Shown one piece after another: positions 16,220 through 64,000 of a DNA stretch of 64,000 bases. The notes beneath the pieces are model-generated. The model had not been told where the DNA came from, searched no databases, and saw only the letters and a list, made by a program, of their open reading frames with translations. The translations under genes were made by a program, and so were the position numbers. The stretch is taken from positions 189,138 to 253,137 of IMG/VR virus record IMGVR_UViG_3300027759_000046. One strand, 5' to 3'. The number at the start of each line of letters is the position of its first letter. The stretch's first letter is position 1.

Positions 16220-16842
16220 TCTTCTTTAGTTGATTTAGTATTTCCGAACTTAGATAAGAATATGTCGGCAGTCTTCTCAAGAACACTATTGAATGCTGTG
16301 TCAGATTCACGAATTGATTTAAAATAGTCAACGAAACCTACCATATCTGCAATTTTATAAGTATTAATCTTGACCATATCAGATGAATTTCCGTCAATTG
16401 AGACAAATGAATCTCCTGTTACTTTTAAGACAATACCAGTATGACCTTTTCCAGATGAAGCGCCGCCTCGTGACTTAATAAAGACTTGACCCGGCTGAAC
16501 CTTTGAGGGATCGCGTGAGTCTATCTTATTTTCAGCAGGTGCAGAATTCCAATGAGACATAACTGCTGCAGTTTTAGGTAGAGGATTTTCAATACTAAGT
16601 TTTGAACAAAGCTCATCGAACATTGCATAAACGAATGCCATGCACCATGGATTACCTGCGCCTAGTCCAAGCTTACCGAGCATACCCTTAACCATTGACC
16701 CGTCATTATTTCCTTCTTCTTTTTTCCCAACGTAATCTGCTAACACATGACCAAATGTTTCGGCTGCATTCGTTGCAGTATCAGGTTTAATCGCTAGTTC
16801 AGCTTCAGTTATGAATTGATTAAAATCTTTAATAAGTTTCAT
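16216..16842 (-). CDS. CHAP-domain amidase/peptidase, leader-tagged
   Basis: PWCMAFV, GHTGIV and IDGNS motifs; MKLIKDFNQFITE. Confidence 0.9.
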   Translation of the reverse strand: MKLIKDFNQFITEAELAIKPDTATNAAETFGHVLADYVGKKEEGNNDGSMVKGMLGKLGLGAGNPWCMAFVYAMFDELCSKLSIENPLPKTAAVMSHWNSAPAENKIDSRDPSKVQPGQVFIKSRGGASSGKGHTGIVLKVTGDSFVSIDGNSSDMVKINTYKIADMVGFVDYFKSIRESDTAFNSVLEKTADIFLSKFGNTKSTKED

Positions 16843-30064: not shown

Positions 30065-31603
30065 TTATCTTCTAACCTTTAGGAAGTCAGAGAATGAAGT
30101 AATCACAGTAGCTTCAGAAACTGCGGTAAATCCTCCTTGTTGACCGCCTTGTTGACCGCCTTGAACAGGAGTCTTTTGCATGTCTTGGGAAATCTTATCA
30201 ACTTGTTGAGCAAGAGGTCCTCCACCTGTAATACCGGCCCAATAGCCGTTACATAGAGAAAGCATGTCTCCGCTTATTTCAGAAGCAACGCAGTACTCGT
30301 AAAAGTCTCCGTCTTCTCCAAAATTCTTAGACCATACTTGTTTAACAACTGCTGCTGTTTGTGGGCTAAGTGAAGTGATCATGAAGGTGATTTGTAATTC
30401 GTCAGCTCCGTCAGTATAACCTTTTGCTAATTCTCTAATTTGAGTACAGAATGCAAATGCTGCATCTTCAGCTGTGAAGTTTTGAGCTTGAACTGGTTCT
30501 GCACCGCTTGCTGCGGCTGAGAGAGCTCCGCCTGTTGCCATTCCGGCACCAACTCCTGCTCCGATTTTTCCACCGACTTGAGCAGCTTTGCCTGCTTGAG
30601 TTAAGGTTGAGAAACCTGATTGAGCTGCTCTAAAGTCATTTGCACCAGCTGCCAGTCTTGAAACGTTTGCCGCTCCTTGAACTCCAACACCAGTTGCTTC
30701 AGCTCCAGTTGTTGCCATTGCACCGCTTCTAAATGCTGTGAAACCTCCTCTTAATTTATTAACGGCTCCAGCTGCTCTAACCGCTCTAGCTCCAGTAATA
30801 AGGCCTTTTGCCGCGGCTCCTACACCGAATGTACAAAGCCCAATCGCAACGTCTACTACCAATGATTCTAGAAAATCTACTCCCATTCCGGTCGCAATAT
30901 CTTGTTCAGTAACGGTATCACCGTAAACTGCTCTAGCTAAAACTTCAGGAGTTCCAGAGAAATCTCCTTTAACCGCATCCATTAGGGACTCATTATATGC
31001 TGTCTGATATGCAGTACCTAATGCTTTGAATATTTCTGGCACGTTTGCACCTTTTTCGTAACCAATACGATAGATTGCTCCAGCTAATGCACCAAGCTTG
31101 TCTTCGTCTGTTCCAAAATTTAATCCGAAAATTGAACTTCCTTCAACACCCTTTCTAAATTGAGTTGCTAAGTAATTCATATCTAAACCTTCGATTACCT
31201 TAGACGTTGAATCCCAATCAATATAAACTCCAGATTTTCCAGACGCGGTTTTACCGCCAGCTACATAGATTGAAACTGCGTATTCTTGGTCTCCGATTTT
31301 TACGGTAACTCGACCTGGACCAGATTGGCCAGACGCTACTAAGTTTGCAGACTCAGCGTTAAGCTTTAAGAATTCTGCGTCCGCTTTATCGCCTTTGCTA
31401 GCATTATCAATAATTAATTTCTTGATTGCCTGAACTTCCGGAGAATCAGTTGGTTCAATTGAAATGGTATTACCTTCAGGTTTTGCACCAGGCGAACCGG
31501 CTGTGCCAGCGGTACCAGCTGAACCGGCTTCAGTTAGCGAATAGTAGCCCAAAGACTTGCTCTCGTTTAATATTGCGTAATTTCCTATGTTTATGTGTCT
31601 CAT
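30065..31603 (-). CDS. putative virion protein with annexin-like repeats and Gly/Ala-rich membrane segments
   Basis: FGTDEDKL..AVKGDFSG and GYTDGADE..VASEISG; hydrophobic VAIGLCTFGVGAAA; LNE leader and GSAGTAG repeat. Confidence 0.55.
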   Translation of the reverse strand: MRHINIGNYAILNESKSLGYYSLTEAGSAGTAGTAGSPGAKPEGNTISIEPTDSPEVQAIKKLIIDNASKGDKADAEFLKLNAESANLVASGQSGPGRVTVKIGDQEYAVSIYVAGGKTASGKSGVYIDWDSTSKVIEGLDMNYLATQFRKGVEGSSIFGLNFGTDEDKLGALAGAIYRIGYEKGANVPEIFKALGTAYQTAYNESLMDAVKGDFSGTPEVLARAVYGDTVTEQDIATGMGVDFLESLVVDVAIGLCTFGVGAAAKGLITGARAVRAAGAVNKLRGGFTAFRSGAMATTGAEATGVGVQGAANVSRLAAGANDFRAAQSGFSTLTQAGKAAQVGGKIGAGVGAGMATGGALSAAASGAEPVQAQNFTAEDAAFAFCTQIRELAKGYTDGADELQITFMITSLSPQTAAVVKQVWSKNFGEDGDFYEYCVASEISGDMLSLCNGYWAGITGGGPLAQQVDKISQDMQKTPVQGGQQGGQQGGFTAVSEATVITSFSDFLKVRR

Positions 31604-31625: not shown

Positions 31626-32834
31626 TTATTTCTTTTCTTCGGTTCCTTCTGCTGGAGCGGTTGCCGTCTGTACTGCAACTGGAGCAGTTGCTCCTCCAGG
31701 TTTATTGATATAGATGAAACCTGCTTGACCAGCTGTTCCGCTTGTTCCGCCAGTACCACCAGTACCACCAGTACCAGACGTTCCGCCAGTAGTTACAACT
31801 GGGTTAGTTCCTTTACCTGCAAGTTCCCAAAGCTCTTTTAATCGAGCTAGAGTTATTCCAACTTTTGTGCAGTATTTAGCAAGATATTCAACATCATTTG
31901 AGTTGACCGCATTATGTTCAGCTTCTTTTGCATCAAAGAACATTCCAAAGGCAGTTGCTGTGTTTGGACCGTAATTACCGTCCGGATTGCCTAATTTATC
32001 TTGAACCCTTTTTCCAGCCTCGCCGTATTTCTCAGCAAGAACTTTTTCTTTAAGGATTAGTTGAACGAATTTTACCTCTTGTCCCTTTGACCCTCTAGAA
32101 ACTTTAATTCCGGTTTGAAGAGCTCTACCGTTAGGATTTGGGTCTTGCTTATTACTAACAATCTCAAATGCAAGAAGTTTCTCAGTTAAGTATTTTAAAA
32201 TTTGATCGTCCGCAGCGGTGTCTTTCCAATCCCATGGAAATACTCCGCCAGTACCGCCTGTTCCAGAAGAACCGGCTGATCCAGCTGTACCGGTCGTACC
32301 TGCTGTTCCAGAAGAACCACTTGTTCCAGTTTCAACTTTAATAATCTCTGGTTTAACTACTGGATTTAGGTCGGAATTCATTTTGGTAGCGTCCTCGGCT
32401 TTGTATAATTTAAGTTTACCATTTGAACTAGTTAAGAAAGGCTGCGCTTTTGATACGTCGTATTTGGAAGCATCTCTAACAGATAAGATTCCCTTAAAGA
32501 TTTGTTGGCCTGTTGCTGAACGCTCTTTGTCTTTAGTAACTGCAATGAATACGATATTATTTGCGACCTTTGACATTACTACTGCGCTCGCTGATAATTG
32601 ATCAGCTGCATTCTTTTTAGCCTCATCTGGATTCTCAGTTTCCATTTTCATAACGAAATGAAATGCAGCGATTTCGCCAGCATTAGCGTCCGGCTTATCT
32701 TCGTCAACTTTGAATTTTTGATCAGGGGTTAAAAATGAGAGTAGTGCTTCGTTTAGAGGCATTGTGCCCTTGGTTCCAGTTGACTTAGTATAGCTTTCGT
32801 TAATAAAGTCGTCAAATGATTTAAAACTTTTCAT
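31626..32834 (-). CDS. putative virion protein with GT/SG repeats and peptidoglycan-binding domain
   Basis: MKSFKSFDDFINE; RGSKGQEVKFVQ...DGNYGPNTATA; GTSGSSGTAG tracts. Confidence 0.65.
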   Translation of the reverse strand: MKSFKSFDDFINESYTKSTGTKGTMPLNEALLSFLTPDQKFKVDEDKPDANAGEIAAFHFVMKMETENPDEAKKNAADQLSASAVVMSKVANNIVFIAVTKDKERSATGQQIFKGILSVRDASKYDVSKAQPFLTSSNGKLKLYKAEDATKMNSDLNPVVKPEIIKVETGTSGSSGTAGTTGTAGSAGSSGTGGTGGVFPWDWKDTAADDQILKYLTEKLLAFEIVSNKQDPNPNGRALQTGIKVSRGSKGQEVKFVQLILKEKVLAEKYGEAGKRVQDKLGNPDGNYGPNTATAFGMFFDAKEAEHNAVNSNDVEYLAKYCTKVGITLARLKELWELAGKGTNPVVTTGGTSGTGGTGGTGGTSGTAGQAGFIYINKPGGATAPVAVQTATAPAEGTEEKK

Positions 32835-52033: not shown

Positions 52034-52660
52034 TTAAAAATATTGTTCTAAGTTATCTCGCATTTGAGGATTTTTTTCAAGAACTCTGTCTTTTACCATT
52101 TTACGAGCCTTTCTGATTTTGGTTTTAACGGTATTCAGGTTCATGCTGTACTTTTCAGCAATTTCGTTACCTTTCATTAAATGAATCTCCTTGTCTATTA
52201 GAATTGACTTTTCAATACAGTCAGGCAGAGCGGCCATTTCCATTTGGGTCATGTTGTACAGTGAATCTAGGTAAATCTCTTTATCGAAATTGAAAGCTGA
52301 ATCATCTTCAATTGCTGGAGGCGAAAGCATATTATCTAAACGAACGGCCCATTGCTTTTGCAATTTGTGTTTATGCAATAGAGATTCGTTCTTTGCGATT
52401 GTATAGATCCAAGTTGTGAATCTGAAATTATCGTTATACGAAGCCAATCCTTTAAATATTTTAAAGAGAGTATTATGTAGAACCTCTTCGGTTTCGTCCG
52501 GGTCATTAAAAAATTTCCAGATGAAATATTTTAATTTTGGATACATAATAGAGGCTAGTCTATTTCTATCTCTTTCGGTGTACTCGCCGGCTTTAATTTT
52601 TTCGGCAAGTGATTGCATCTCATCGTTGAGCTGTTTGTTAATTAAGTCGTATGACGTCAT
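52034..52660 (-). CDS. RNA polymerase sigma-70 factor, ECF-like
   Basis: region 2 EEVLHNTLFKIF...FTTWIYTIAKN; region 4 EIAEKYSMNLNTVKTKIRKAR. Confidence 0.92.
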   Translation of the reverse strand: MTSYDLINKQLNDEMQSLAEKIKAGEYTERDRNRLASIMYPKLKYFIWKFFNDPDETEEVLHNTLFKIFKGLASYNDNFRFTTWIYTIAKNESLLHKHKLQKQWAVRLDNMLSPPAIEDDSAFNFDKEIYLDSLYNMTQMEMAALPDCIEKSILIDKEIHLMKGNEIAEKYSMNLNTVKTKIRKARKMVKDRVLEKNPQMRDNLEQYF

Positions 52661-52671
52661 GTAGTTATTTT

Positions 52672-53394
52672 TTACTTAAAGAATTTATGATTAGGGTTTT
52701 CGTCTTTCCATTTTTCGTAGCGTTCTGTGATTTGCACCAAGATTTTATTACGAACAATATCTTCGTCTCCAAATTGATGTATTCCTATTCCATTTATACC
52801 TGTCATTAATTTGATAAAATCAGGTAAAGCTACTTTACTCTTATTGATGTCATATTGGCTTACATCTCCGCAAATTAAAGTTTTAGAATCCTTGCCCATT
52901 CGGGTTAAAAACAACATCAGTTGTTTAAAATCAGCATTCTGAGCCTCATCTAAAATCATTAAGCAATTATCAAAAGTAGCGCCTCTCATGTAGGCAAGCG
53001 GTCTAAATTCAATAACGCCAGCGCCTTCGAGCCAATTAACCAGGTTTGGATCATGTAATATTTTTACCAAATTCGATCGGTAACTTTCCATGAATGGGTC
53101 AATTTTATCCTTGATTTCACCAGGTAAGAATCCTAATTTTTCTCCAGATTCTTGAATGGGTTTAGATAGGATGATCTTTTTGATTTTGCCCGAAATATAG
53201 AGGTTTAGTGCAGCCAGACATGCTGTAAATGTTTTACTTGTCCCAGCAGGTCCATAACAAAAAGTTATGTCATTAGACAAAATTTGATTTAAGTACTTCT
53301 GTTGAGATGGTTTAAGAGTTACTGAGCGTAAATCTTTCTCTGTGATTTCAGTGACTGATTGTCGTTGTGATTTTTTAGCTGGTCTATTTGACAT
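52672..53394 (-). CDS. phoH: PhoH-family ATPase
   Basis: GPAGTSKT, LGFLPG, LAYMRGATF, DEAQN and GDVSQYD; ATG at 53394. Confidence 0.95.
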   Translation of the reverse strand: MSNRPAKKSQRQSVTEITEKDLRSVTLKPSQQKYLNQILSNDITFCYGPAGTSKTFTACLAALNLYISGKIKKIILSKPIQESGEKLGFLPGEIKDKIDPFMESYRSNLVKILHDPNLVNWLEGAGVIEFRPLAYMRGATFDNCLMILDEAQNADFKQLMLFLTRMGKDSKTLICGDVSQYDINKSKVALPDFIKLMTGINGIGIHQFGDEDIVRNKILVQITERYEKWKDENPNHKFFK

Positions 53395-53683
53395 TTCTTT
53401 TGGTTTTTTTAATTGGTGTTTGTATTTTGACTTGTAGATCTTTGCAACGTTGACATGCTTCGTAATCTTCCAGACTTTCAAATAGAGCAAGGGCCTTTTC
53501 AAGACAGTCTGGCCAATCTTCTCTATTTGCAATTACATCCAGTGCTTCTTCCATTATCTGCAACTTTTTGATGTAGATTCGTGGAGCTCCTTTTTTATGA
53601 GCACTATCTATTGCATCAACGATTTGACTAAAAATACTGTGTTTATTGTCCAGGTAATTTCGGACCTCATCTATCTTCTTCAT
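53384..53683 (-). CDS. small protein with UVR-like motif
   Basis: LEDYEACQRCKDL. Confidence 0.55.
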   Translation of the reverse strand: MKKIDEVRNYLDNKHSIFSQIVDAIDSAHKKGAPRIYIKKLQIMEEALDVIANREDWPDCLEKALALFESLEDYEACQRCKDLQVKIQTPIKKTKRNVK

Positions 53684-55630
53684 TTACGTATTTCCATAGA
53701 ATTTTTGTAAAGTCTCCTTGTAATAGTCAACGTAGCTGGAATCTGCCTGCTGTGCAGTTGACGGCCTCTTTGCTACGCCTGACTGATTTAGATTTCTTAG
53801 TGTATCAAAATCGTACTTGGAATCTTTAGCTAAATATACTTCATTTAGGAACCTTGAGTAGACTTCTGCTAAATATTCTTTTGGCTGATTGTCAAGTTCT
53901 TCATTTGCAATCTCCCAGAAGTTTGGAGACTCAAAGAACGATGATGTGTTTACGCAAGTCATCGCCAAATCGTCATTACCGCTTTGGCTGCGATATGAAC
54001 CGTTTGATGATTTACCGAATGATCCAAGTTCGTGAATTGTCTTAAATTCATTTGGCAAGATCTTATTAACTGCTGCAAGATACTTAAATCTCTCGCAGAA
54101 TTTTATCTTATTTGTCATTGTTAATTTTAGGCCAGGTTTCCAGGCTTGAGCAGATTCAGTATGCTTTGAAAAGACTAGCATGCCGTTCCAATAGGCTTCG
54201 TTTTTTGTGATTTTGTCCATCACATACTCGCCCTTATGATTTAATTCAATTAGCATCCTAACCTTGTCTGGATTAAATATGTTGAATATAATATGCTCTA
54301 GCGAATTGCAGAATTCGTTAATATCTTTTTTATTGGTTCGGAACGTTGCAACTTGCACTAGCGCAAAGATATCAGTTTCATTTTTAATAAAGTCTTTTAC
54401 CTGTTCCAACATTTTGATAGGTAGTGCAACGAACTTAAACACGTTAACTACTGAAAAGTCTCGACTCAGTCCATCGGCTGTATCTACCGAAATTACATAA
54501 TAGCTGGGATCAGCCTTAATGTCATCTGGGCTTAACTTGTTGAAGTTAGGGTGAACTGAAATTCCGTCTAATAGTTCCAATCTATCTGGAGTTTGGGACC
54601 ATTCTGGGATGACGTAGTCTGTGCGGAGATTAAAGATCTTTTTAAGATCCTTTGACGGTAATAAGAGCTTATCAGATGAGAAAAACTGTAATCCATATTC
54701 TTGATTAAAATCTTCTTCTGACCCCAAGTTTGCAATTGTCATCTTCTTCCAAGCATCATCACGACCTGGCACCTGCCACCAGTCCACTCTTAGCGGAACG
54801 TATGCGTTCTTTTGCTCGAGAGCGTCCATGTAGATTTCATAAAAACGGTTCATTCCATTTGGAGTTGAGGTTATTATAATCTTGGAATTGGATGAGGCTG
54901 AAATAGTAGGATAAATTGCTCGATAAAAGAAGTCAAGGTACGATGGATTGATGTGAGCAAACTCATCTATGTATAGTACGTGAATCGTAAAACCAATACC
55001 AGTATTTTTGGTAGTAGTACGACCAATTAAACGACACCCATTATCAAATTTCATGGACATTACGTTATTTGAAATGCAACCAGGTTTTAGGAAGAACGGT
55101 AAGTTCTCGAATACTGACTTGATTTTATCAAGTACCTCTTTGGTAGTAGACGCGATATTGGCTACCGCTAATACGTTTTTATCGGTATGGAATAGTAGGT
55201 ACCATGCAACGAATACGCCAGACATAACTGTCTTACCGATCTGACGACTTGCCATCAAGCAGTTAAAACGATTATTCTTAAACGATCTAATAATCTCTTC
55301 TTGATAGTCTCGAAGCGTGATTTGCTGAATTCCCTCTTCTGTCATTACCTGCGCGTACTTGCTAGCAAAATAAACTGGATCAGCTTTACATCGCTTAATC
55401 TCGTCTATCTCTTCTGGCGTGTATTCGAAAACGATATTCGCTTTCTTCCAGACAGGATCATTATCTTTAAATGGGGAATTCTTGATTGTCTTAACGTCAA
55501 TTAAGCCGTTTTCGAAATCTTCAAGTAGTTGGTCTACTTTGGCTGTCGTCCAGATTGCGTTATTCTCTTGATCAAGATTTGATAGCTTAATCCTAGAGGA
55601 CCCGCCTGCGTTTGTTAGAAAATCTTTCAT
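53684..55630 (-). CDS. terminase large subunit (T4 gp17-like)
   Basis: LRDYQ, SRQIGKT, YIDEFA, TSTPNG, FNQEY, VDTADG and GNDDLAM. Confidence 0.96.
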   Translation of the reverse strand: MKDFLTNAGGSSRIKLSNLDQENNAIWTTAKVDQLLEDFENGLIDVKTIKNSPFKDNDPVWKKANIVFEYTPEEIDEIKRCKADPVYFASKYAQVMTEEGIQQITLRDYQEEIIRSFKNNRFNCLMASRQIGKTVMSGVFVAWYLLFHTDKNVLAVANIASTTKEVLDKIKSVFENLPFFLKPGCISNNVMSMKFDNGCRLIGRTTTKNTGIGFTIHVLYIDEFAHINPSYLDFFYRAIYPTISASSNSKIIITSTPNGMNRFYEIYMDALEQKNAYVPLRVDWWQVPGRDDAWKKMTIANLGSEEDFNQEYGLQFFSSDKLLLPSKDLKKIFNLRTDYVIPEWSQTPDRLELLDGISVHPNFNKLSPDDIKADPSYYVISVDTADGLSRDFSVVNVFKFVALPIKMLEQVKDFIKNETDIFALVQVATFRTNKKDINEFCNSLEHIIFNIFNPDKVRMLIELNHKGEYVMDKITKNEAYWNGMLVFSKHTESAQAWKPGLKLTMTNKIKFCERFKYLAAVNKILPNEFKTIHELGSFGKSSNGSYRSQSGNDDLAMTCVNTSSFFESPNFWEIANEELDNQPKEYLAEVYSRFLNEVYLAKDSKYDFDTLRNLNQSGVAKRPSTAQQADSSYVDYYKETLQKFYGNT

Positions 55631-56370: not shown

Positions 56371-56616
56371 TTAGTTTATGCGGTTTTCGTTTTTATCTAG
56401 TGCAGGATTAGCAAATATTTTGATCTGCTTAACTGCTTCAATGTGTTCGTAAATGTAGGTTTCAAGATAGCTCATGAAGCCGTCTAGTATTGGATTTGCA
56501 CCAAACATTTGGTTAGACAAAGTCTTCTTTAGAATTGAGTCTTTGTACTTAAAACCCAGATGCAGGCGTTTGTCCTTGCGATTGTATATTGTCCAGTAGA
56601 GAGAATTTCTTATCAT
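56371..56616 (-). CDS. hypothetical protein
   Basis: 81-aa ORF between the baseplate gene and terminase. Confidence 0.55.
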   Translation of the reverse strand: MIRNSLYWTIYNRKDKRLHLGFKYKDSILKKTLSNQMFGANPILDGFMSYLETYIYEHIEAVKQIKIFANPALDKNENRIN

Positions 56617-58301
56617 TATACGATTCCTAATTTTTTACGAACTACTTTCTGTGATTTAATTTCAATATTTAGTGCACCTAACGAGCCGTCAGATAGTCCA
56701 GTTTGATATGCATTACCGTTTCGATCGGACCAACCTCCTCTGATTACTGGGAATTCGGCTGATTTAATTATAATATCATTAAATTCGTCTAGTCCAACTC
56801 TATCAGTTTCACGTCTATTCGGCCTTTCCGTAAAAGCAACCTCATTCAGTTCAGATAGTATTGTGATGCTCACTGAGTCAACACCATTTACCTCCTCAAC
56901 TATTTTAATTAGATCACTCTTTGGAACACGGTCGTTTCGGTTAAGTTTAATAAAGTAGTTGCCGACTGCGTCTGAAATATCTGACTTAATAATATCATTT
57001 GAAACATCGTCAAATGCAATAACGCTGATGTTTAGCACGTATTTAGTAATAACTGGATCCAGCAAATTAATTTCACTTGAAATCATTTTTGTTCCAGAGC
57101 GTTCAATGTATTTTAGAAGCTCATTTTTTTGAAATTGAGTTAACGTGAATTTGGATAGAGCCAAGTTAAAATAGTCAGTTCCGGTTTTAAACATTTGCGA
57201 AACGTCTGGCACAAGAAATAAGTTAATCATTCTTGCGTCTAACTCATCTAGGAAAACTCTAATGGTTGAGAACATCTGCATTTTGTGAAGTAGAACTTCG
57301 TAATTATCAACGTTAACTAATGCAAAATTCTTTGATGCTTTTGGCGCGATTAATCGAGTTAAGGCAATCTCTTCAGGATCAACACCAAAACTTGGTGGAC
57401 TTACTGTGTAAATATCAAAATATTCATTAAGGTTTATCTCTTCTCCGATTGGAGAAAATGCAGTCTCAGCGAAAGTAAAGAATACTTGACTTGGATTATC
57501 AATTATGATATTTCCGCCAGCACCCTCTGATACTAAGTATTCAACAACGATTTCAGAACCGGCTGCTGGAATTTTACCAAATGAACCGTTTCCAAAATAG
57601 ATGTCTAATCCATTAGTTATCCCGGTTTTAGCAATGAAACCTTTTCCGCCGCGAGGCATGTCTAACATTGACTCGTATTTGGTCCATTGTTCTCCATTGA
57701 CATACACCTTAACCTTAAAATTATCGATGTAGTAATTATTTGGAAAACCTAACTGGTAACTCTCAAGAGCTTGGCCCTTTCCAGTAAAAGTTTGGGTCTC
57801 AATTTGACCTTGTCGCAGGCTAAAAACTGTTGGGGGTTCATTGCCTGTCAAGTTTAATCGGATTTCATCTTGCGGTAATTCAATAACGTAGGTTAGGCCG
57901 TTATTATCGCAAGTTACCTTGAACAGATCGTTTAATAGGGCTTTATTAACGGGTGGAGTTATTCCAGGTTTTCTAACTACTCTGATCTGGGCAGTTGCGC
58001 CAATTGCACGGCTTGGATTGTGGCCTGCTAAACTTGCTAATGAATAGATTGAAGATGGTCGAGTTGCCTCATTGATATTCAACTCAGTAATTGAGTCTTC
58101 AATATAATAAAATATTAATTGGCTTAAGTTTTCAAAAACAATCAACAACTGACCAAATGGCGAAGCTGCCGTAAAGATGGTCTTTGCCTGCTTGAAACGA
58201 TTCTGCAAGAATGTGATTGATTCTCCCAAGATATCGTTTATTCGGATCTTTAGGCTCGTGAAGAGTCTAAGTGATGTATTTTGACTTGATAGGTTTGCCA
58301 T
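56616..58301 (-). CDS. baseplate wedge subunit (T4 gp6-like)
   Basis: SIYSLASLAGHNP, IYFGNGSFGKIP..G..IVVEYLVSEGAGGN and ALVNVDNY. Confidence 0.88.
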   Translation of the reverse strand: MANLSSQNTSLRLFTSLKIRINDILGESITFLQNRFKQAKTIFTAASPFGQLLIVFENLSQLIFYYIEDSITELNINEATRPSSIYSLASLAGHNPSRAIGATAQIRVVRKPGITPPVNKALLNDLFKVTCDNNGLTYVIELPQDEIRLNLTGNEPPTVFSLRQGQIETQTFTGKGQALESYQLGFPNNYYIDNFKVKVYVNGEQWTKYESMLDMPRGGKGFIAKTGITNGLDIYFGNGSFGKIPAAGSEIVVEYLVSEGAGGNIIIDNPSQVFFTFAETAFSPIGEEINLNEYFDIYTVSPPSFGVDPEEIALTRLIAPKASKNFALVNVDNYEVLLHKMQMFSTIRVFLDELDARMINLFLVPDVSQMFKTGTDYFNLALSKFTLTQFQKNELLKYIERSGTKMISSEINLLDPVITKYVLNISVIAFDDVSNDIIKSDISDAVGNYFIKLNRNDRVPKSDLIKIVEEVNGVDSVSITILSELNEVAFTERPNRRETDRVGLDEFNDIIIKSAEFPVIRGGWSDRNGNAYQTGLSDGSLGALNIEIKSQKVVRKKLGIV

Positions 58302-58802: not shown

Positions 58803-58834
58803 CTTTTTAGACAGCCTGATTGATAAATAAGAGT

Positions 58835-59587
58835 ATGAAGGCACTTAACACCGACGATATTTTTTTAAGGAATTTAACAATAGCTCTACTTGATCTCCTG
58901 AATGGATCAATGACACTTTCTCTGTCTAGAGACGATCATAAAGAGACATTCTCTGTTCCATTTCTCTATAATTTTGGAACTGATGAGGGTTTCTTAAAGG
59001 ATTTTTATATTGGACTCCCAGACAACTGTCAAATCCCAGTAGCCGAAGGCACTTACGATATTATTCCAAGAGGAATTGTTACCCTAGGATCATTTCAGGT
59101 AAAATCATCAGATATTACAAATCGATTCATTCGTGGACAGTACTCCGAATTGGAACGCGGACCAAACGATCAAAACGTTTTAACTGGATATTCTGCTCAA
59201 CTCTATTCTCTACCAATGTCAGTTAAGTTTGACGTAAAGATTATTTGCGATAACTTAAATAAAGCATTCAAGATTGCTGAGAGAATGTTAGACATTAATT
59301 ACGCAAATCGTGTAATGTATTTTCAATACAATGGAGTTCGTATTCCGGCTCAATTCCAGTTTCCAACAAATGAAACGGTTGACAAGGTTTACAAATTTAC
59401 AATGAATGAAAATAACAAGATCAATGTGAGTCTTTCAATTGATGTTGAGACCTATTTCCCAAGCTTTGAGCAGAGTTCTAAGAGGCTTAGCACAAATGTT
59501 ATGGAAAGAGTTAATATCAATAAAAAGGACGATACTGGAAATAATATGACAAGCAGTTGGGTTGATCAAAATACACCTATCATTTAA
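58835..59587 (+). CDS. tail terminator/sheath stabiliser (T4 gp15-like)
   Basis: VPFLY, IPRG and PMSVKFDVKIICDNLNKAFKIAERM pattern; GATAAATAA at 58822. Confidence 0.7.
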   Translation: MKALNTDDIFLRNLTIALLDLLNGSMTLSLSRDDHKETFSVPFLYNFGTDEGFLKDFYIGLPDNCQIPVAEGTYDIIPRGIVTLGSFQVKSSDITNRFIRGQYSELERGPNDQNVLTGYSAQLYSLPMSVKFDVKIICDNLNKAFKIAERMLDINYANRVMYFQYNGVRIPAQFQFPTNETVDKVYKFTMNENNKINVSLSIDVETYFPSFEQSSKRLSTNVMERVNINKKDDTGNNMTSSWVDQNTPII

Positions 59588-60369
59588 TGAAGTACTTATT
59601 AGAATTTAAAACATTTACAATTACTGAAGGCGGTAACGCTTTTCCTGATGCACAAAGCCTTGATCGTGGCGCGGTTGAACCGGCTTTTGCTAAATTCCAA
59701 GATGCAATGTCAAATGTATTTGGCAAAGCTGAACTTGAATTAATTGGTTCATGGAAACAAAAAGAAGTATCTGGTGATCTAGATACTCTATTCTATTCTG
59801 ACTTAACTCTTCCTGAGATCTCAGCAAAAGTTCAAGAAGCAGGATACGAAACCAAGATATTTTATGGATTTAATATTGTGTCCGTTAAATTTGAAATTTC
59901 ACCAGAGCATTTTGTTCAATTTGATATGTTCGTTAGGCCGATGGACACCAACCGTGATGTAAACGATTTGTTCTATAAATCAACTGATGAAGAACGGTAT
60001 TCAACAAAGCATCGTGTCTTTTTGATCTTTTGTGCGCTAGATTCTATGAAGTTTGATAAGATTGAAAAAGACGGTGTGTTAACTCATTTTAAAGGTTATA
60101 TGCTTCGACCTGACGGTCTCTATCAATTCACGAAAGAGATGAAGAAGATTAATTATAAGATTATGGATCGCCAAAAGTTAACCGACGACCTTGATCAAAT
60201 TTCGTTGATCTTATTTGGTAAAGTCTATCCGTATCAACAATGGAATACTTACGAAAAGACTCTCACCTTGCTTGAGAAGAATCCTAAATTAGACATGAAG
60301 ACTATTCTTGACGAATATCGTGCTAAATTGGATGAAGAAGGTCTTGTGGTTCCAGGTGGAATCAGTTAA
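59587..60369 (+). CDS. Pol-beta-superfamily nucleotidyltransferase, leader-tagged
   Basis: MKYLLEFKTFTITEGGN; LIGS..SGDLD..VQFD. Confidence 0.78.
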   Translation: MKYLLEFKTFTITEGGNAFPDAQSLDRGAVEPAFAKFQDAMSNVFGKAELELIGSWKQKEVSGDLDTLFYSDLTLPEISAKVQEAGYETKIFYGFNIVSVKFEISPEHFVQFDMFVRPMDTNRDVNDLFYKSTDEERYSTKHRVFLIFCALDSMKFDKIEKDGVLTHFKGYMLRPDGLYQFTKEMKKINYKIMDRQKLTDDLDQISLILFGKVYPYQQWNTYEKTLTLLEKNPKLDMKTILDEYRAKLDEEGLVVPGGIS

Positions 60370-60980
60370 TCAAATTCCAATTCCAAATCAAAATTGAAAT
60401 ACTTAAAATCTACAGTAAATGTCTGAAATTGTGGAGTAACTGACGAGTACGATAGAGTTATTGCACTCATTTGAGTAATCATTGGTCGGTTAAAGATAAT
60501 TGAACTTACTCCATACCCTTCATTATTTAAAAGAGTTAATCTGATCGGGCTAAAATACGGATGGTTGCCGTGTCTGATTGGACTATTTGTTAGAGCTTGA
60601 CCCAACGAATTGCCTGTATTCTTTTCGCTTGTGTTTGCAGGCTCAAGGTAATTAAGTAACGTATCCATCATGATGAAATAGTTTAAGTAGGCATCAGTTA
60701 ACTTAAAAGTTAATTTAAGATCCCTATTAAACATGTCAGCAATGGGCTTTGAAGATTGAACTTCTTGTATTTTACCAAGAGTTCTGGTCTGAGTCGGCAA
60801 TTGGCTTGTTAATCCAGGAAAGGTTACGCTCTGAATAGTTGATGCCATAAAATCTGAAATTGATTTATACGGCAATAACAGATTACGATAGTATTTCTCA
60901 TACTTCGCATTGACCGCATCATTAAAGAAATCTTGCGGTAAATTAACTAAAAAGCTGTTCTGTCTAGAATTAAGTATCAT
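60366..60980 (-). CDS. tail tube/tail completion protein (T4 gp3/gp19-like)
   Basis: IQSVTFPG..LKLTFKLTDAYLNY..FTVDFKY. Confidence 0.65.
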   Translation of the reverse strand: MILNSRQNSFLVNLPQDFFNDAVNAKYEKYYRNLLLPYKSISDFMASTIQSVTFPGLTSQLPTQTRTLGKIQEVQSSKPIADMFNRDLKLTFKLTDAYLNYFIMMDTLLNYLEPANTSEKNTGNSLGQALTNSPIRHGNHPYFSPIRLTLLNNEGYGVSSIIFNRPMITQMSAITLSYSSVTPQFQTFTVDFKYFNFDLELEFD

Positions 60981-60990
60981 ACAGAATTAT

Positions 60991-63333
60991 CTATATGAGG
61001 CCGAGAGCGGTCTTTATTTTATCAATTACCGTTGATGTTTTGATTGTTCTAGAGCACTCAAACATTCGGTGAGTTCCTTTGTGTACTGGACACCAGTTCC
61101 AATCAGCCGGATCAAGCTTGTGAGTATTGAAACAGCCTGAACATTTGCCGGCTGGTGCACAAACTCTATGAGTGTTCTCAACCGTTTCGGTGTAATCATA
61201 CGAGAATCCTGAAATAAGGACAAGTGGGGTCGTGGTTGCCCAAGCCAACCAGCTTAGTCCACTACCAATTCCTACAAAGACTTGAGACTCTTCAAGTTCA
61301 CGAATGACATTCTCGATTGGACCTGACGCTAATTTGCGAACGCTAGTTGGATGAGAATTACCCATGAAGCCATCTTCTTCTCTTGACACCAGCACTACTT
61401 CATAACCGGTTTCCTTACACCAGTCAACTACTTCTTGCCAGCCGTCTGGATTATTCCAGTATTTTGCTTGGCATGTGCCGTGAATTGCGATTGCGATCTG
61501 TTTTTTCTTTTCAACCTTTGGAATCGCAAGTAGAGGTTTAGTCTCTTTATACTCAAGACCCAAGATATCAAATGCACATTTTTGCATTGCCTGATCCTTG
61601 ACTTCTTTGACGTTTCGGTTTAGATCAATTTTATGATCTTGATCGTAATACCAGCCAATATTGTACATTGCAACAATATTATCAACAACATCGCCAGGTT
61701 TAATGAACTCAATTTCCGGATACTGTTTTTCAAAAAGTTGGTTTAGATGAGTTGAACAAATTACCTTGCAACCGTGCTTCTTACGAAACTCTTCAACTGC
61801 TGGAAACCAGGCCAAACTATCGCCAAGAGAAGATGAATCTACTGAAATATAGACTCTACGATCTTTTAGGCTAATTGACTCGTCTAGGACAAGTTGACCG
61901 CTTTCTTTGTGAGTTACCTTAACTCTCCAATCAATATAGTATCGCTTATTTGACTTGACCCACATATTACGGGTGATTGTGTCCTTGTGCTCGACCTTGC
62001 CAGTTTTCTTATTAATAAACTCAACTAAGTATTCGCCTGGGGCTCCCCCAGTTATCTCTACGTGTGGTCCATTTACGAAATGATAGTTAATAGTCAAGTC
62101 TTTTGCACGCTTTAGATTCACCTCTCTGATGTGACTTGAACGTTCATCAATATGATCAGCTGCAAGCCGTGCAACTCTATCCCAGTTAAAATCTTGATGG
62201 ATCTTTTGAGCATCAGCTAGCGCCTTCTCCTTATGTGATTTATAATTTAAGTAGGCATCTCTCATTGCTCTACGTAAGTCGTTAAAATCAGGCTCATAAT
62301 AATTGCCAACGATATCTGCAGTAGTTACGGTCGGTTTATCTTCCGCTGAGCCAAGCGCTGAGCGTTCGCCAACAATTTTGACTGGAATACCTTTGCCTTC
62401 AGCAAACTCCATTTGGCCTGAGCACTCTGAATAGATTGATGGAGTTCCGCAAGCCATTGCCTCGATTAGTGGCAGATTCCAGCCTTCACTACGCGCACAT
62501 GATACAAATACGTTAACTGACTTGATTAGGTCAACGTACTCTTTTCTTGGCGGCATGTGTAATACTTTAATACGGTCGTCTTTGAATTCGTATTTTGCTA
62601 AGCGCTCTTCGGTTGTTTGACAACCGTCTGCACTAAAGCCCCATGGATTATCAGCAGATAAGATTAGATCTACAGGTTCGTCCGCTGAAAATTCTTCCAA
62701 GAAAGCTCTAACTATTTCGGTTGTAGATTTGCGGTAATCCCAACGACCGAATAGGCCGAATGTAAATCGGTCTTCTCCGGTTAATGGATGAACGACATTT
62801 TCAGGAAAGAATGTCTCAATATCAACTCCTTCTGGGATTACAAATATTTTATCAGCTGGGTAGCCCTGTTTGACTGTGCAATCTCGTTGCCATTTAGACG
62901 GAACCCAAACTTCATCAAATTCTAATAACTTATCAAAGAACTCTGATGGCTGTAGCGTTGATTCCCAAACGTTATAGGCAATCTTGTAATTATCGTAATT
63001 GTGATAAAAGTAATGATGATTAGTTTCGTTTAGAATTAGGTCGACATGAGTCTGGCCGAGGTTTGGCCAAGATTGATATACTTTATGATCGCTAAGAGTA
63101 CGATCTCCATTCCATAGAGATTGCTCAACAAGTAAAGACTTGATCTGATCTGTCATATACGCCTCACCATTATGAGGTTCGTCAGACATACCCTCCCACG
63201 AAGATCCTACTGTGTAGTTTCGGATTTCAAGAGGAAGCCTCTCTGCTAATTTTGTGAAAAATGATTGAGCATGATTATTATAACCGGTATTGCCAATAAA
63301 AGATGTGTGGACCTTGAGTTTTAACTTTGACAC
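60991..63333 (-). CDS. GT4 glycosyltransferase fused to Aah/TibC-like O-heptosyltransferase domain
   Basis: EGWNLPLIEAMACG (GT4); SLGDSLAWFP, GIGSGLSWLAW and CSGCFN..WCPVHKGT.RMFECSRTI (Aah/TibC Cys ligands). Confidence 0.88.
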   Translation of the reverse strand: MSKLKLKVHTSFIGNTGYNNHAQSFFTKLAERLPLEIRNYTVGSSWEGMSDEPHNGEAYMTDQIKSLLVEQSLWNGDRTLSDHKVYQSWPNLGQTHVDLILNETNHHYFYHNYDNYKIAYNVWESTLQPSEFFDKLLEFDEVWVPSKWQRDCTVKQGYPADKIFVIPEGVDIETFFPENVVHPLTGEDRFTFGLFGRWDYRKSTTEIVRAFLEEFSADEPVDLILSADNPWGFSADGCQTTEERLAKYEFKDDRIKVLHMPPRKEYVDLIKSVNVFVSCARSEGWNLPLIEAMACGTPSIYSECSGQMEFAEGKGIPVKIVGERSALGSAEDKPTVTTADIVGNYYEPDFNDLRRAMRDAYLNYKSHKEKALADAQKIHQDFNWDRVARLAADHIDERSSHIREVNLKRAKDLTINYHFVNGPHVEITGGAPGEYLVEFINKKTGKVEHKDTITRNMWVKSNKRYYIDWRVKVTHKESGQLVLDESISLKDRRVYISVDSSSLGDSLAWFPAVEEFRKKHGCKVICSTHLNQLFEKQYPEIEFIKPGDVVDNIVAMYNIGWYYDQDHKIDLNRNVKEVKDQAMQKCAFDILGLEYKETKPLLAIPKVEKKKQIAIAIHGTCQAKYWNNPDGWQEVVDWCKETGYEVVLVSREEDGFMGNSHPTSVRKLASGPIENVIRELEESQVFVGIGSGLSWLAWATTTPLVLISGFSYDYTETVENTHRVCAPAGKCSGCFNTHKLDPADWNWCPVHKGTHRMFECSRTIKTSTVIDKIKTALGLI

Positions 63334-63378
63334 AGAATAGGGTGTTTATAAGCTTATACTCAAGGTCCTCATCAGGTT

Positions 63379-63783
63379 TTATTCGCAAGGGGTAAACCTA
63401 GCAATCATTCCTCCACCGTCATACTGGAAAGAATATCCGCCTATTTCCGAGTCTGACTCAACGTAATAGTATTGGCCCTGCTGTAAGTTTTCAAACGGCA
63501 TAGATACTTCGGCATCGAGCCATATTCCAGAAAAGCCGTCGTCAATATACAATCTGCCCGGGTCAACTGGTATTCCGTTTTTATTGGTTGAGCATGCCGA
63601 ACCAACATCCAAGAATCCTCCATTGCCTGGAATCATTCCGAATAGCACAACCACATAAGAGTCACCGCCGCCACTAACACCAGTTAAGTCGACGCCGATC
63701 ACATTTGAGCTGTTTTGGAGAGAGGCCCCGCTTAGTTCAACTCCGTTGCTTAAGTCTACTCCGTTAATGTTTACCTTAGCCAT
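63379..63783 (-). CDS. putative virion-associated protein
   Basis: 134-aa Gly-rich beta protein starting MAKVNINGVD. Confidence 0.5.
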   Translation of the reverse strand: MAKVNINGVDLSNGVELSGASLQNSSNVIGVDLTGVSGGGDSYVVVLFGMIPGNGGFLDVGSACSTNKNGIPVDPGRLYIDDGFSGIWLDAEVSMPFENLQQGQYYYVESDSEIGGYSFQYDGGGMIARFTPCE

Positions 63784-63797
63784 TTATATTCCATTTT

Positions 63798-63998
63798 TTA
63801 AGGCAATCTAACCCAAGTGTTATCCGGCCAGAATCTTAATATTGGCCAGTCCATTGAGAATACGTAACCGATAATTCTGACATATTCACCTGAGCCAGTT
63901 GGCGGAACTATATCGATCTCACCTGGTGTAGTCTGCATGTACATAGGCTTGCCATTAATATAACCATTTCCATTGCACTGTTCGTTTTGAGCAAAGCC
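63798..63998 (-). CDS. C-terminal fragment of a phage structural (fibre/decoration-like) protein, truncated by the window edge
   Basis: manual translation ...GKPMYMQTTPGEIDIVPPTGSGEYVRIIGYVFSMDWPILRFWPDNTWVRLP*. Confidence 0.6.
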   Translation of the reverse strand, partial: GFAQNEQCNGNGYINGKPMYMQTTPGEIDIVPPTGSGEYVRIIGYVFSMDWPILRFWPDNTWVRLP

Positions 63999-64000
63999 AA

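What the first reader, a model, noticed from the sequence alone, without database searches (positions are those of the whole stretch)
60991..63333. GT4 fused to an autotransporter-type O-heptosyltransferase next to tail genes
Seen: an N-terminal GT4 domain plus a C-terminal Aah/TibC-like domain retaining the Cys ligands. Established: Aah/TibC glycosylate Ser residues in repetitive adhesin sequences. Inference: two-step glycosylation of virion surface proteins (glycan shield or host recognition), with the Gly-Ser/Thr repeat proteins as candidate substrates.
Basis: partly seen in the sequence, partly recalled or inferred. Interest (0 to 1): 0.6.

Follow-up and report, generated by a model that had tools for sequence, protein, structure and literature searches.

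The report
Phage fibre-glycosylating GT4–heptosyltransferase fusion
A jumbo phage encodes a two-headed sugar-transferase (a GT4 domain fused to a TibC/Aah-type protein O-heptosyltransferase) that sits between a giant serine-rich collagen-like fibre gene and the tail tube gene, which points to sugar-coating of the phage's own fibres and would give the heptose-making genes found in viruses a use.

Summary
Window 60991-63333(-) is one 780-aa ORF. Residues ~1-405 are a GT4 GT-B domain with an intact EX7E motif. Residues 413-780 are a genuine TibC/Aah-family domain (TIGR04414, 275 bits against a cut-off of 200; TibC 4RAP E 9e-59; AF2 model TM 0.87). It keeps the catalytic Asp, the phosphate and heptose contacts, all four iron-finger Cys and the hydrophobic thumb tip. 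The adenine-reading Arg is lost.

The gene lies 10 nt upstream of the tail tube gene in a 253-kb phage contig. The contig end cuts off the key neighbour. An identical contig shows that two genes upstream lies a collagen-like (Gly-Ser/Thr-Ser)n fibre protein of at least 2018 aa.

GT-BAHT fusions, or adjacent gene pairs, are widespread in uncultured large phages. They co-occur strongly with such collagen-like genes:
- 32/40 BAHT-carrying records have the repeat.
- 16/35 repeat-carrying records have BAHT.
- 0/32 random controls have either.

This phage also carries an HldA/HldC-like NDP-heptose cassette. In other phages that cassette lies directly downstream of the fusion gene.

Best reading: hyper-O-glycosylation (heptose plus a second sugar) of virion fibres. 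This is inferred from genomic context and has not been demonstrated. It is a new variant of a known enzyme kind.

The parts
60991..63333 (-). GT4-BAHT fusion ORF, 780 aa, GTG start
   Evidence: ORF list and translation; Pfam, NCBIfam and PHROG matches; AF2 model pLDDT 91.8.
62119..63333 (-). N-terminal GT4 (GT-B, retaining-type) domain, residues 1-405
   Evidence: PF00534 37.7 bits, PF13692 and PF20706. Foldseek matches GT4 enzymes: GlgM, PBCV NY2A 3OY2, MshA, HepE, PglA.
62461..62487 (-). GT4 EX7E motif, E283-E291 (EGWNLPLIE)
   Evidence: Read directly. E283, E291 and the residues between them are invariant in 75 homologues, as are G196, R197 and K202.
60994..62097 (-). C-terminal TibC/Aah-type O-heptosyltransferase (BAHT) domain, residues 413-780
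   Evidence: TIGR04414 275 bits, cut-off 200. TibC 4RAP E 9e-59. Foldseek on 4RAP: TM (target) 0.87, rmsd 2.5 A, 34% identity.
61909..62091 (-). TibC-type N-terminal beta-barrel, residues 415-475
   Evidence: PF21129 TibC_1st 24.7 bits, just under GA 27. The model shows strands 414-498.
61819..61821 (-). Codon of Asp505, equivalent to TibC catalytic base Asp110
   Evidence: Alignment. Role taken from PMC4358343. Invariant in 121/121 homologues. Codon checked.
61054..61143 (-). Iron-finger segment with Cys731, Cys734, Cys748 and Cys760
   Evidence: Aligned to TibC Cys339/342/358/370. Kept in 88/121 homologues; the other 33 have lost all four together.
60366..60980 (-). Tail tube protein gene, 204 aa; starts 10 nt after the fusion's stop
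   Evidence: phrog_45 tail tube 7.8e-09. The synteny GT->tube is conserved in L010 and L019-L028.
63379..63783 (-). 134-aa ORF between the collagen-like gene and the fusion; no family match
   Evidence: Present at 100% identity in L019. Not conserved in more distant relatives.
63798..64000 (-). Last 66 codons of the collagen-like (G-S/T-S)n fibre protein; the rest lies beyond the window and contig end
   Evidence: The ORF is open at its 5' end. The identical contig G106/L019/L428 shows at least 2018 aa, composed of Ser 46%, Gly 31% and Thr 12%. Pfam Collagen 30.7 bits, GA 27.2.
58820..59587 (+). T4 gp15-like tail sheath stabiliser (context)
   Evidence: PF16724 25.2 bits, GA 25.
56616..58301 (-). 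561-aa tail/baseplate-type structural ORF (context)
   Evidence: phrog_219 2.1e-30.
53684..55630 (-). Large terminase (context; shows this is a T4-type morphogenesis block)
   Evidence: PF03237 72.5 bits and terminase PHROGs.

Best explanation
The ORF is a bifunctional protein O-glycosyltransferase of a large, uncultured tailed phage, made together with the tail and fibre proteins.

Its C-terminal TibC/Aah-type domain transfers a heptose from an NDP-heptose onto serine (possibly also threonine) hydroxyls of the giant, proline-free collagen-like (Gly-Ser/Thr-Ser)n fibre protein encoded two genes upstream. The donor is probably ADP-heptose. It would come from the phage's own HldA-like kinase, HldC-like nucleotidyltransferase and PMI/lyxose-isomerase-type cupin, or from the host.

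The fused N-terminal GT4 domain adds a second sugar, most simply by extending the heptose. In relatives an FkbM-type methyltransferase domain is inserted between the two domains, or the module is split into two overlapping genes, so some phages would also methylate the glycan. The result is a densely glycosylated virion fibre.

Shown here: the domain identities, the catalytic residues, the gene order, the co-occurrence with collagen-like genes and the linkage to the heptose cassette.

Inferred: the acceptor, the sugar, the order of the two transfers, a TibC-like ring oligomer, and the role (stiffening or stabilising the Pro-free triple helix, protection from proteases, or shielding and host recognition).
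For: Enzyme:
- TIGR04414 scores over its trusted cut-off. TibC is the top hit by sequence and by fold.
- Asp505, Thr620, Lys624 and Trp695 (TibC D110, T226, K230, W305) are invariant or nearly so in 121 homologues.
- The four Cys are kept. The thumb tip is F656-M657 plus F758, matching TibC F265, V266 and F368.
- The GT4 EX7E motif is invariant.

Setting:
- The order is collagen-like fibre -> 134 aa -> fusion -> tail tube, all on one strand with gaps of 45 and 10 nt.
- The closest near-complete relative (93% by CheckV) has a collagen-like ORF in the same place carrying Collagen and Peptidase_S74 domains and tail-fibre PHROGs.
- The fusion is 69.5% identical between these two phages, while the flanking tail genes are 85-95% identical and the fibre has no detectable match. 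It therefore varies along with the hypervariable fibre region.

Association:
- 25/82 BAHT loci have S/T-rich GXY runs within +-6 kb.
- 32/40 BAHT-bearing viral records have at least 6 G-WSN-WSN triplets; the reversed-pattern control gives 0.
- Of 35 viral records chosen only for at least 8 such triplets, 16 have TIGR04414 at E<=1e-10. In 11 of those 16 a collagen-like run lies within the ~10-kb flanks fetched around the BAHT match, 0.3-6.6 kb from it.
- A random 14-mer sample of 32 viral records had 0 BAHT and 0 repeats. Fisher p = 4e-6 and 4e-13.
- Counting only BAHT-ascertained loci, 10 of 20 clusters at 70% identity have at least one repeat-adjacent member.

Donor:
- The HldA-like and HldC-like ORFs have TIGR02198 and TIGR02199 as their best matches.
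- The cupin-HldC-HldA cassette lies immediately downstream of the GT4-BAHT gene in L033-L037. Parts of the cassette follow the gene in L039 (cupin and HldA-like) and L044 (HldA-like).

Precedent:
- TibC modifies Ser in Gly-flanked contexts and modifies free peptides.
- BclA collagen-like repeats are densely O-glycosylated.
Against: - There is no direct evidence of glycosylation.
- TibC Arg286, which reads adenine N1 and is needed for activity, is Val here and in most homologues. The nucleotide, and perhaps the sugar, may therefore differ.
- The HldA-like and HldC-like scores (114 bits each) are well under the equivalog cut-offs (345 and 181.5).
- No GmhA/SIS_2 isomerase was found. The cupin's role rests on weak matches.
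- The cassette was found in only 6 of 54 other BAHT-bearing records. It is absent from the cultured relative Mel-JY01.
- Two large BAHT clusters have no collagen-like gene within +-6 kb.
- The contigs are phylogenetically related, so the Fisher tests overstate independence.
- TibC was reported to modify Ser but not Thr, and to act on a beta-helix rather than a collagen-like chain.
- The complex prediction gave no answer.
Confidence: 0.5

Rival explanations
1. The fusion glycosylates other virion proteins rather than the collagen-like fibre. Candidates are the tail tube encoded immediately downstream, the sheath, or the poly-Thr-linker proteins. This would parallel mycobacteriophage capsid and tail-tube glycosylation.
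For: - The fusion gene directly precedes the tube gene in this clade.
- Stand-alone BAHT genes in other big phages lie next to sheath and baseplate genes.
- Several proteins in this genome have poly-Thr runs.
- Two large BAHT clusters have no collagen-like gene within 6 kb.
- Tail tube and capsid glycosylation is known in mycobacteriophages (Freeman 2023, as cited in PMC12619734).
Against: - The tube protein has no Ser/Thr-rich tail or repeat.
- Tube adjacency is limited to the close clade, whereas the collagen-like co-occurrence spans many clusters and both directions of ascertainment.
Confidence: 0.2
2. The enzyme acts on host targets during infection: host surface adhesins or autotransporters, S-layer or pilus proteins, or envelope glycans. 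The purpose would be to block superinfection or remodel the cell.
For: - The characterised family members TibC and Aah modify bacterial surface adhesins.
- Phage glycosyltransferases that alter host surfaces are well known (reviewed in PMC12619734).
Against: - The gene sits inside the late morphogenesis block, not among early or moron genes.
- No target repeat (TIGR04415) is present in the phage genome, and the host is unknown.
- The strong link to phage-encoded collagen-like genes would be left unexplained.
- In cellular genome bins the fusion is found only on MAG contigs of scattered taxonomy, which look like phage contigs.
Confidence: 0.1
3. The module glycosylates a non-protein acceptor (hypermodified phage DNA or a polysaccharide or lipid), and its resemblance to BAHT reflects only the shared GT9-type fold.
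For: - Phage glycosyltransferases are classically DNA-modifying.
- The genome carries a wider sugar-nucleotide gene set: an SDR epimerase, an NTP-transferase-HAD fusion and an FkbM methyltransferase.
Against: - The match is specific to the protein-modifying BAHT equivalog (275 bits), against 27 bits for LPS heptosyltransferase I.
- The BAHT-specific beta-barrel, thumb and iron finger are retained.
- The gene's position is structural.
Confidence: 0.05

Closest known systems
TibC / Aah (BAHT family, TIGR04414) of enterotoxigenic and diffusely adhering E. coli
   Same: - Same family by curated HMM, by sequence (E 9e-59) and by predicted fold (TM 0.87).
- Shares the beta-barrel plus GT-B core, the catalytic Asp, the Thr/Lys/Trp donor contacts, the four-Cys iron finger and the hydrophobic thumb tip.
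- Like TibC, it is expected to hyper-modify Ser in a long repetitive extracellular rod.
   Different: - Encoded by a phage and fused to a GT4 domain.
- No autotransporter and no strand-loop-strand target repeat.
- The candidate acceptor is a collagen-like G-S/T-S repeat, not a beta-helix.
- The adenine-reading Arg286 is replaced by Val.
- 33 of 121 homologues have lost the iron finger altogether.
Mycobacteriophage virion glycosylation (Freeman et al. 2023, cited in PMC12619734)
   Same: In both, phage-encoded glycosyltransferases sit next to structural genes and are proposed or shown to decorate virion proteins.
   Different: - Different enzymes; none is of BAHT type as far as I know (from memory, the paper was not held).
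- The acceptors there are the C-termini of capsid and tail-tube subunits, not collagen-like fibres.
- Hosts there are actinobacteria.
BclA exosporium nap of Bacillus anthracis, and Mimivirus L230 with viral collagen-like proteins
   Same: Both are collagen-like Gly-X-Y surface filaments that are densely glycosylated (BclA: PMC10050317). L230 is a virus-encoded bifunctional enzyme that modifies viral collagen-like proteins (PMC9614988).
   Different: - The chemistry differs. BclA carries GalNAc-rhamnose-anthrose chains. L230 hydroxylates Lys and glucosylates it.
- Neither involves a heptosyltransferase or a GT4 fusion.
- The repeat here is Pro- and Lys-free G-S/T-S.
NDP-heptose biosynthetic enzymes found in viruses (Tang et al. 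2024, summarised in PMC11461863 and PMC11573728)
   Same: This phage has an HldA-like kinase and a single-domain HldC-like nucleotidyltransferase. As reported for viruses, it has no clear phosphatase.
   Different: - Those papers leave the role of viral heptose open. Here the cassette is linked to a heptosyltransferase gene, and in some phages it is directly adjacent.
- The motif reads ..VGDYSTT, not the promiscuous GRSTT (STTR5) type.
- A cupin replaces the SIS-type isomerase. This is an inference.

Membership tests
BAHT (TibC/Aah, NCBIfam TIGR04414) | Score over the curated equivalog cut-off across the full model | tested here: met
   275 bits against 200, covering profile positions 10-373 of 374. 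Search of the genome with the family model gave 277 bits.
BAHT (TibC/Aah, NCBIfam TIGR04414) | TibC protomer fold: N-terminal beta-barrel plus GT-B catalytic core | tested here: met
   AF2 model pLDDT 91.8. Foldseek on 4RAP: TM (target) 0.87, rmsd 2.5 A over 374-380 columns. PF21129 scores 24.7 bits, just under GA 27.
BAHT (TibC/Aah, NCBIfam TIGR04414) | Catalytic base Asp110 and donor contacts Thr226, Lys230 and Trp305 | tested here: met
   The equivalents are D505, T620, K624 and W695. They are conserved in 121/121, 119/121, 117/121 and 121/121 homologues.
BAHT (TibC/Aah, NCBIfam TIGR04414) | Arg286 contacting adenine N1 (ADP specificity; needed for TibC activity) | tested here: not met
   It aligns to V676. 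That column holds Arg in only 8/121 homologues. An Arg lies two residues later in this protein but is not conserved.
BAHT (TibC/Aah, NCBIfam TIGR04414) | Four-Cys 1Fe-0S iron finger | tested here: met
   C731, C734, C748 and C760. Metal binding itself cannot be tested here.
BAHT (TibC/Aah, NCBIfam TIGR04414) | Beta-hairpin thumb with two hydrophobic tip residues plus Phe368 (dodecamer contacts) | tested here: met
   F656-M657 and F758 by alignment. The tip is Y/F-M in 77 of the 88 Cys-bearing homologues.
BAHT (TibC/Aah, NCBIfam TIGR04414) | Ring-shaped dodecamer | not testable with these tools
   Only the determinants could be checked. No oligomer model was made.
BAHT (TibC/Aah, NCBIfam TIGR04414) | Transfers heptose from ADP-heptose to Ser | not testable with these tools
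   Context only: an HldA/HldC-like cassette in this genome, adjacent to the fusion in other phages.
BAHT (TibC/Aah, NCBIfam TIGR04414) | Partner autotransporter adhesin with strand-loop-strand target repeat (TIGR04415) | tested here: not met
   No match at E<=1 in the 253-kb genome. The host genome is unknown.
GT4 (Pfam Glycos_transf_1, retaining GT-B) | Family HMM over the gathering score, and GT-B fold | tested here: met
   PF00534 37.7 bits against 26.4; PF13692 36.9 against 27. Foldseek matches GT4 enzymes.
GT4 (Pfam Glycos_transf_1, retaining GT-B) | EX7E motif and the conserved Arg/Lys of the donor-phosphate site | tested here: met
   E283-x7-E291, G196, R197 and K202 are invariant in 75 homologues. 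Assigning roles to the Arg/Lys rests on general knowledge of GT4 enzymes.
NDP-heptose biosynthesis (HldA, HldC, GmhA, GmhB) | Heptose-7-P kinase and heptose-1-P nucleotidyltransferase | tested here: inconclusive
   TIGR02198 (114.5 bits, cut-off 345) and TIGR02199 (113.7 bits, cut-off 181.5) are the best matches. They clearly beat ribokinase and glycerol-3-P cytidylyltransferase but stay under the cut-offs.
NDP-heptose biosynthesis (HldA, HldC, GmhA, GmhB) | SIS-type sedoheptulose-7-P isomerase GmhA | tested here: not met
   No SIS_2 match in the genome. A conserved cupin with weak MannoseP_isomer and Lyx_isomer affinities travels with HldC and HldA.
Collagen-like phage fibre | Long uninterrupted Gly-X-Y repeat over the Pfam Collagen threshold, joined to a fibre-type C-terminal domain | tested here: met
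   - L019/L428: at least 2018 aa, with GXY runs of 1095 aa. The tested C-terminal piece scores Collagen 30.7 bits (GA 27.2).
- L022: Collagen 52.8 bits plus Peptidase_S74 52 bits and tail-fibre PHROGs.
- Triple-helix formation is untested.

The most novel reading that the evidence does not exclude
A TibC-like ring of the fusion enzyme threads and processively hyper-heptosylates a proline-free collagen-like fibre of more than 2000 residues, and the GT4 head extends each heptose. The glycans take over the role of hydroxyproline in holding the triple helix together, as glycosylated Thr does in some invertebrate collagens (from my own knowledge). On this reading, virion fibre glycosylation is the hitherto unknown purpose of the NDP-heptose pathway carried by viruses. 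A large, uncultured group of aquatic jumbo phages would then carry sugar-coated collagen fibres.
Probability: 0.3. Interest if true: 0.8.

Novelty: new variant of a known kind. Interest (0 to 1): 0.65.

Why it matters
Protein O-heptosylation is known only from bacterial autotransporter adhesins. Virion glycosylation in phages has so far been shown only for mycobacteriophages, with unrelated enzymes.

If this reading is right:
- A widespread family of large environmental phages builds heavily glycosylated collagen-like fibres with a TibC-type enzyme.
- That gives an explicit use for the NDP-heptose biosynthetic genes recently found in viruses, whose role is stated to be open (PMC11573728).
- It identifies a new acceptor class for the BAHT family.
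- It explains how a Pro-free Gly-Ser-Ser 'collagen' could be stable.

The idea is directly testable, because a cultured relative exists (Microcystis phage Mel-JY01) and because E. coli supplies ADP-heptose for co-expression assays.

There is also an annotation consequence. Gene callers and GenBank records read these repeat genes on the wrong strand.

Tried and rejected
- **Complex prediction.** BAHT domain with a 45-aa G-S/T-S segment gave 'no answer' (score 0.05). This is not evidence either way.
- **STTR5 motif.** I looked for the motif that marks CTP/UTP-promiscuous heptose nucleotidyltransferases, hoping to explain the lost adenine-reading Arg. The phage HldC-like protein reads ..VGDYSTT, not GRSTT, so I dropped that link.
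- **Mel-JY01 'cytidylyltransferase like protein'.** This 639-aa protein near the fusion is NMNAT-like, not HldC-like.
- **TIGR04415 target repeat.** None in the genome.
- **GmhA/SIS_2.** None.
- **Family-model searches for HldC/HldA in other records.** These gave few hits. A protein search then found an HldA-like gene in G001. No HldA family-model search was run on G001, but I treat these tallies as lower bounds.
- **Promoter and terminator scan of 60000-64000.** Counts equal the shuffled expectation, so it is uninformative.
- **Megablast against phage records.** No match.
- **PDB profile search with the cupin alignment.** Nothing significant.
- **Tail tube as acceptor.** It has no Ser/Thr-rich segment.
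- **Upstream neighbours of L010 against our ORFs.** No homology. That is how the antisense gene call on the repeat gene came to light.
Full report
**What is there.** Window 60991-63333 (minus strand) is a single 780-aa ORF starting at GTG. Homologues start at the same position.

The N-terminal ~405 residues match Pfam Glycos_transf_1, Glyco_trans_1_4 and GT4-conflict above their gathering scores, and PHROG 2170. Residues 413-780 match NCBIfam TIGR04414, 'autotransporter strand-loop-strand O-heptosyltransferase', at 275 bits against a curated cut-off of 200. That match covers almost the whole model. LPS heptosyltransferase I scores only 27 bits.

Against the PDB the only sequence hits are the two TibC entries, at E 9e-59. 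An AlphaFold2 model built on 75 homologues has mean pLDDT 91.8. Its C-terminal half superimposes on TibC 4RAP with TM 0.87 and rmsd 2.5 A. Its N-terminal half matches GT4 GT-B enzymes.

**Residue-level check, using the TibC paper PMC4358343.**
- The catalytic base Asp110 corresponds to Asp505.
- The beta-phosphate contacts Thr226 and Lys230 correspond to Thr620 and Lys624.
- The heptose-O4 contact Trp305 corresponds to Trp695.
- The four iron ligands Cys339/342/358/370 correspond to Cys731/734/748/760.
- The hydrophobic thumb tip Phe265-Val266 and Phe368, which hold the TibC dodecamer together, correspond to Phe656-Met657 and Phe758.

In 121 homologues the Asp and the Trp are invariant and the Thr and Lys nearly so.

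Two differences stand out. First, Arg286, which contacts adenine N1 and is needed for TibC activity, aligns to Val676 and is Val or Ile in most homologues. Second, the stereoselectivity position (Pro300 in TibC, Ser294 in Aah) is Gly. In addition, 33 of the 121 homologues have lost all four Cys together and have also changed the thumb tip.

The GT4 half keeps an invariant EX7E motif (E283-E291) and invariant G196, R197 and K202. Both halves look catalytically competent.

**Setting.** The window is the last 64 kb of a 253,137-bp IMG/VR virus record that CheckV rates 94% complete.

Downstream of the fusion, after 10 nt and on the same strand, lies a tail tube gene. A gp15-like gene, a 561-aa tail/baseplate-type gene, the small and large terminase, PhoH and a sigma factor follow. 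The large terminase is nearest to those of uncultured huge phages, Sphingomonas phage PAU, Tenacibaculum phage PTm1 and the Lak phages. The host is unknown.

Upstream lie a 134-aa ORF without family matches and then an ORF cut by the contig end. Another IMG/VR contig (G106; loci L019, L428) is 100% identical across the tail block and reads further. There the cut ORF is a collagen-like protein of at least 2018 residues, still open at that contig's end. It consists almost wholly of Gly-Ser-Ser and Gly-Thr-Ser triplets (Ser 46%, Gly 31%, Thr 12%, almost no Pro), followed by a C-terminal domain of ~230 aa. Its last 66 codons are window 63798-63998.

The tested C-terminal piece passes the Pfam Collagen threshold. 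In the closest near-complete relative (G001, 252.6 kb, 93% by CheckV) the ORF in the same position carries Collagen and Peptidase_S74 (the tail-fibre chaperone) and matches tail-fibre PHROGs.

Between these two phages the tail genes are 85-95% identical and the fusion 69.5%, while the fibre has no detectable match. The transferase thus belongs to the fast-evolving fibre region.

**The family.**
- The word search found over a hundred clusters of 765-790-aa GT4-BAHT fusions. It also found ~1000-aa and ~1225-1330-aa variants with an FkbM or other methyltransferase domain.
- Abundant ~380-aa stand-alone BAHT genes share 50-57% identity. In big phage contigs they overlap by 4 nt the end of a GT4-plus-methyltransferase gene, next to sheath, baseplate and fibre genes.
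- In IMG/VR, 74 loci were retrieved. Nearly all encode a second transferase domain fused to the BAHT domain: mostly GT4, sometimes GT2 or a methyltransferase, in varying order.
- Among 50,697 deposited phage records, the BAHT part matched only four listed records: the cultured Microcystis phage Mel-JY01 and three metagenomic huge phages.
- In species-representative cellular genomes the fusion occurs only on MAG contigs of scattered taxonomy and in no isolate.
- I found no paper on phage BAHTs, and none linking collagen-like proteins with heptosyltransferases.

**Association with collagen-like genes.**
- Ser/Thr-rich GXY runs lie within +-6 kb of the BAHT gene in 25 of 82 loci. These include Mel-JY01 and one of the huge phages, LR756501.
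- Over whole records, 32 of 40 BAHT carriers have at least six consecutive G-WSN-WSN triplets. The reversed-pattern control gave none.
- Conversely, I scanned IMG/VR for at least eight such triplets and took the contigs of 40 kb or more. Of the 35 that could be searched, 16 carry a TIGR04414 match at E<=1e-10, 15 of them over the cut-off. In 11 of the 16 a collagen-like run lies within the ~10-kb flanks fetched around the BAHT match, 0.3-6.6 kb from it.
- A control set of 32 viral records drawn with an arbitrary 14-mer had neither feature. Fisher p = 4e-6 and 4e-13.
- The records are related to one another, so these p-values overstate independence. Counting BAHT clusters at 70% identity among the BAHT-ascertained loci only, 10 of 20 clusters have a repeat-adjacent member. 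Two populous clusters have the repeat gene elsewhere on the contig, not nearby.

**Donor sugar.** The genome carries a sugar-nucleotide region at ~100-111 kb. It contains:
- a 271-aa PfkB kinase whose best family is heptose-7-P kinase (TIGR02198, 114.5 bits);
- a 129-aa nucleotidyltransferase whose best family is heptose-1-P adenylyltransferase (TIGR02199, 113.7 bits);
- an SDR epimerase, an NTP-transferase-HAD fusion and an FkbM methyltransferase.

Both heptose matches are under the equivalog cut-offs, and no SIS-type GmhA is present.

A conserved 127-aa metal-type cupin travels with the two genes. It has weak MannoseP_isomer affinity and viral look-alikes carrying Lyx_isomer. I take it as a candidate sedoheptulose-7-P isomerase; this is inference.

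The important point is linkage. In L033-L037 the cupin-HldC-HldA cassette lies immediately downstream of the GT4-BAHT gene, and in L039 and L044 parts of it do.

The cassette is sporadic, however. HldC-like genes were found in 6 of 54 other BAHT-bearing records, and a weak match in 1 of 26 controls. Mel-JY01 has none. Most carriers would depend on the host or use another donor.

Commentaries on Tang et al. 2024 state that viruses carry heptose biosynthetic enzymes, lack the phosphatase, and that the role is unknown.

**Most likely mechanism.**
- The BAHT domain O-heptosylates Ser in the G-S/T-S repeats of the fibre protein.
- The GT4 domain adds a second sugar.
- Methyltransferase-bearing relatives cap the glycan.
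- The retained thumb and iron finger suggest a TibC-like oligomer acting on a rod-shaped substrate.

Because the repeat has no Pro, dense glycosylation may be what stabilises or stiffens the fibre (my inference). Shielding and host recognition are equally possible roles.

Shown: the domains, the residues, the gene order and the co-occurrences. Not shown: any glycan, the acceptor, the donor or the oligomer.

**Rivals.** In descending likelihood: other virion acceptors (tube, sheath, poly-Thr proteins); host targets; non-protein acceptors. They are weighed in their own sections.

**Comparison and novelty.** The domain is a member of the BAHT family by every sequence and fold criterion I could test except the adenine-reading Arg. 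The system is not 'autotransporter-type', since neither an autotransporter nor its target repeat is present.

Functionally it resembles three known systems: glycosylation of the BclA collagen-like nap, Mimivirus L230 acting on viral collagen-like proteins, and mycobacteriophage virion glycosylation (cited). It uses a different enzyme and a different acceptor from all three. I rate it a new variant of a known kind.

**What led nowhere.** The complex prediction gave no answer. The promoter and terminator scans were uninformative.

Noticed in passing
G000:C1:1-1851 (minus strand; outside the window, at the contig start): An ORF of at least 617 aa runs off the contig start inside a 24-nt tandem repeat that codes for (TTTTTAAP)n. 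It may be the N-terminal part of the same fibre protein if the two contig ends adjoin. Other poly-Thr proteins lie at G000:C1 8600-14716, 133763-135100 and 165774-166529.
   Followed up: partly
L001 (PP395634.1, Mel-JY01) 2-3049 (+); L010 1-4821: Collagen-like G-S/T-S genes are read on the wrong strand. GenBank annotates minus-strand 'hypothetical proteins' (1-651, 739-2298) over a + strand ORF of at least 1016 aa. A metagenome gene call gives a 1700-aa 'PDEP' antisense product.
   Followed up: yes
L009 (G000:C1:95001-115000): A sugar and auxiliary gene region: HldA-like and HldC-like genes, cupins, an SDR epimerase (GalE-like), an NTP-transferase-HAD fusion, an FkbM methyltransferase, an NMNAT-like 488-aa protein and a ClpB-like 658-aa chaperone.
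   Followed up: partly
G001:C1:203019-203801: The HldA-like gene of the closest relative carries one in-frame TAA, and no HldC-like gene was found there. The cassette may be decaying in that phage.
   Followed up: no
Alignment of 121 fusion homologues (P0001-P0121): 33 homologues have lost all four iron-finger Cys together and carry a polar residue plus Phe, instead of Tyr/Phe-Met, at the thumb tip. This suggests a subfamily with a different oligomeric state.
   Followed up: partly
window 1734-2540 (+), 30065-31603 (-), 31626-32834 (-): Three proteins have short G-T/S-A triplet linkers of 24-30 aa. They have no family match beyond a sub-threshold Collagen hit.
   Followed up: partly
window 16216-16842 (-); 52672-53532 (-); 52034-52660 (-): A CHAP-domain protein (probable lysin or virion-associated hydrolase), PhoH, and a sigma-70-family factor.
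   Followed up: no
window 63334-63380 (upstream of the GTG start): No Shine-Dalgarno-like purine run is visible before the GTG start. That would fit a host that does not rely on SD sequences, such as Bacteroidota, but the host was not determined.
   Followed up: no
L429-L442 (GTDB genome contigs): Every 'cellular' occurrence of the fusion is on a MAG contig, binned as Pacearchaeota, Woesearchaeota, Bacteroidetes, Lentimicrobiaceae (256 kb), Patescibacteria and others. These look like phage contigs placed into MAG bins. Four of the 14 also have an adjacent collagen-like run.
   Followed up: partly
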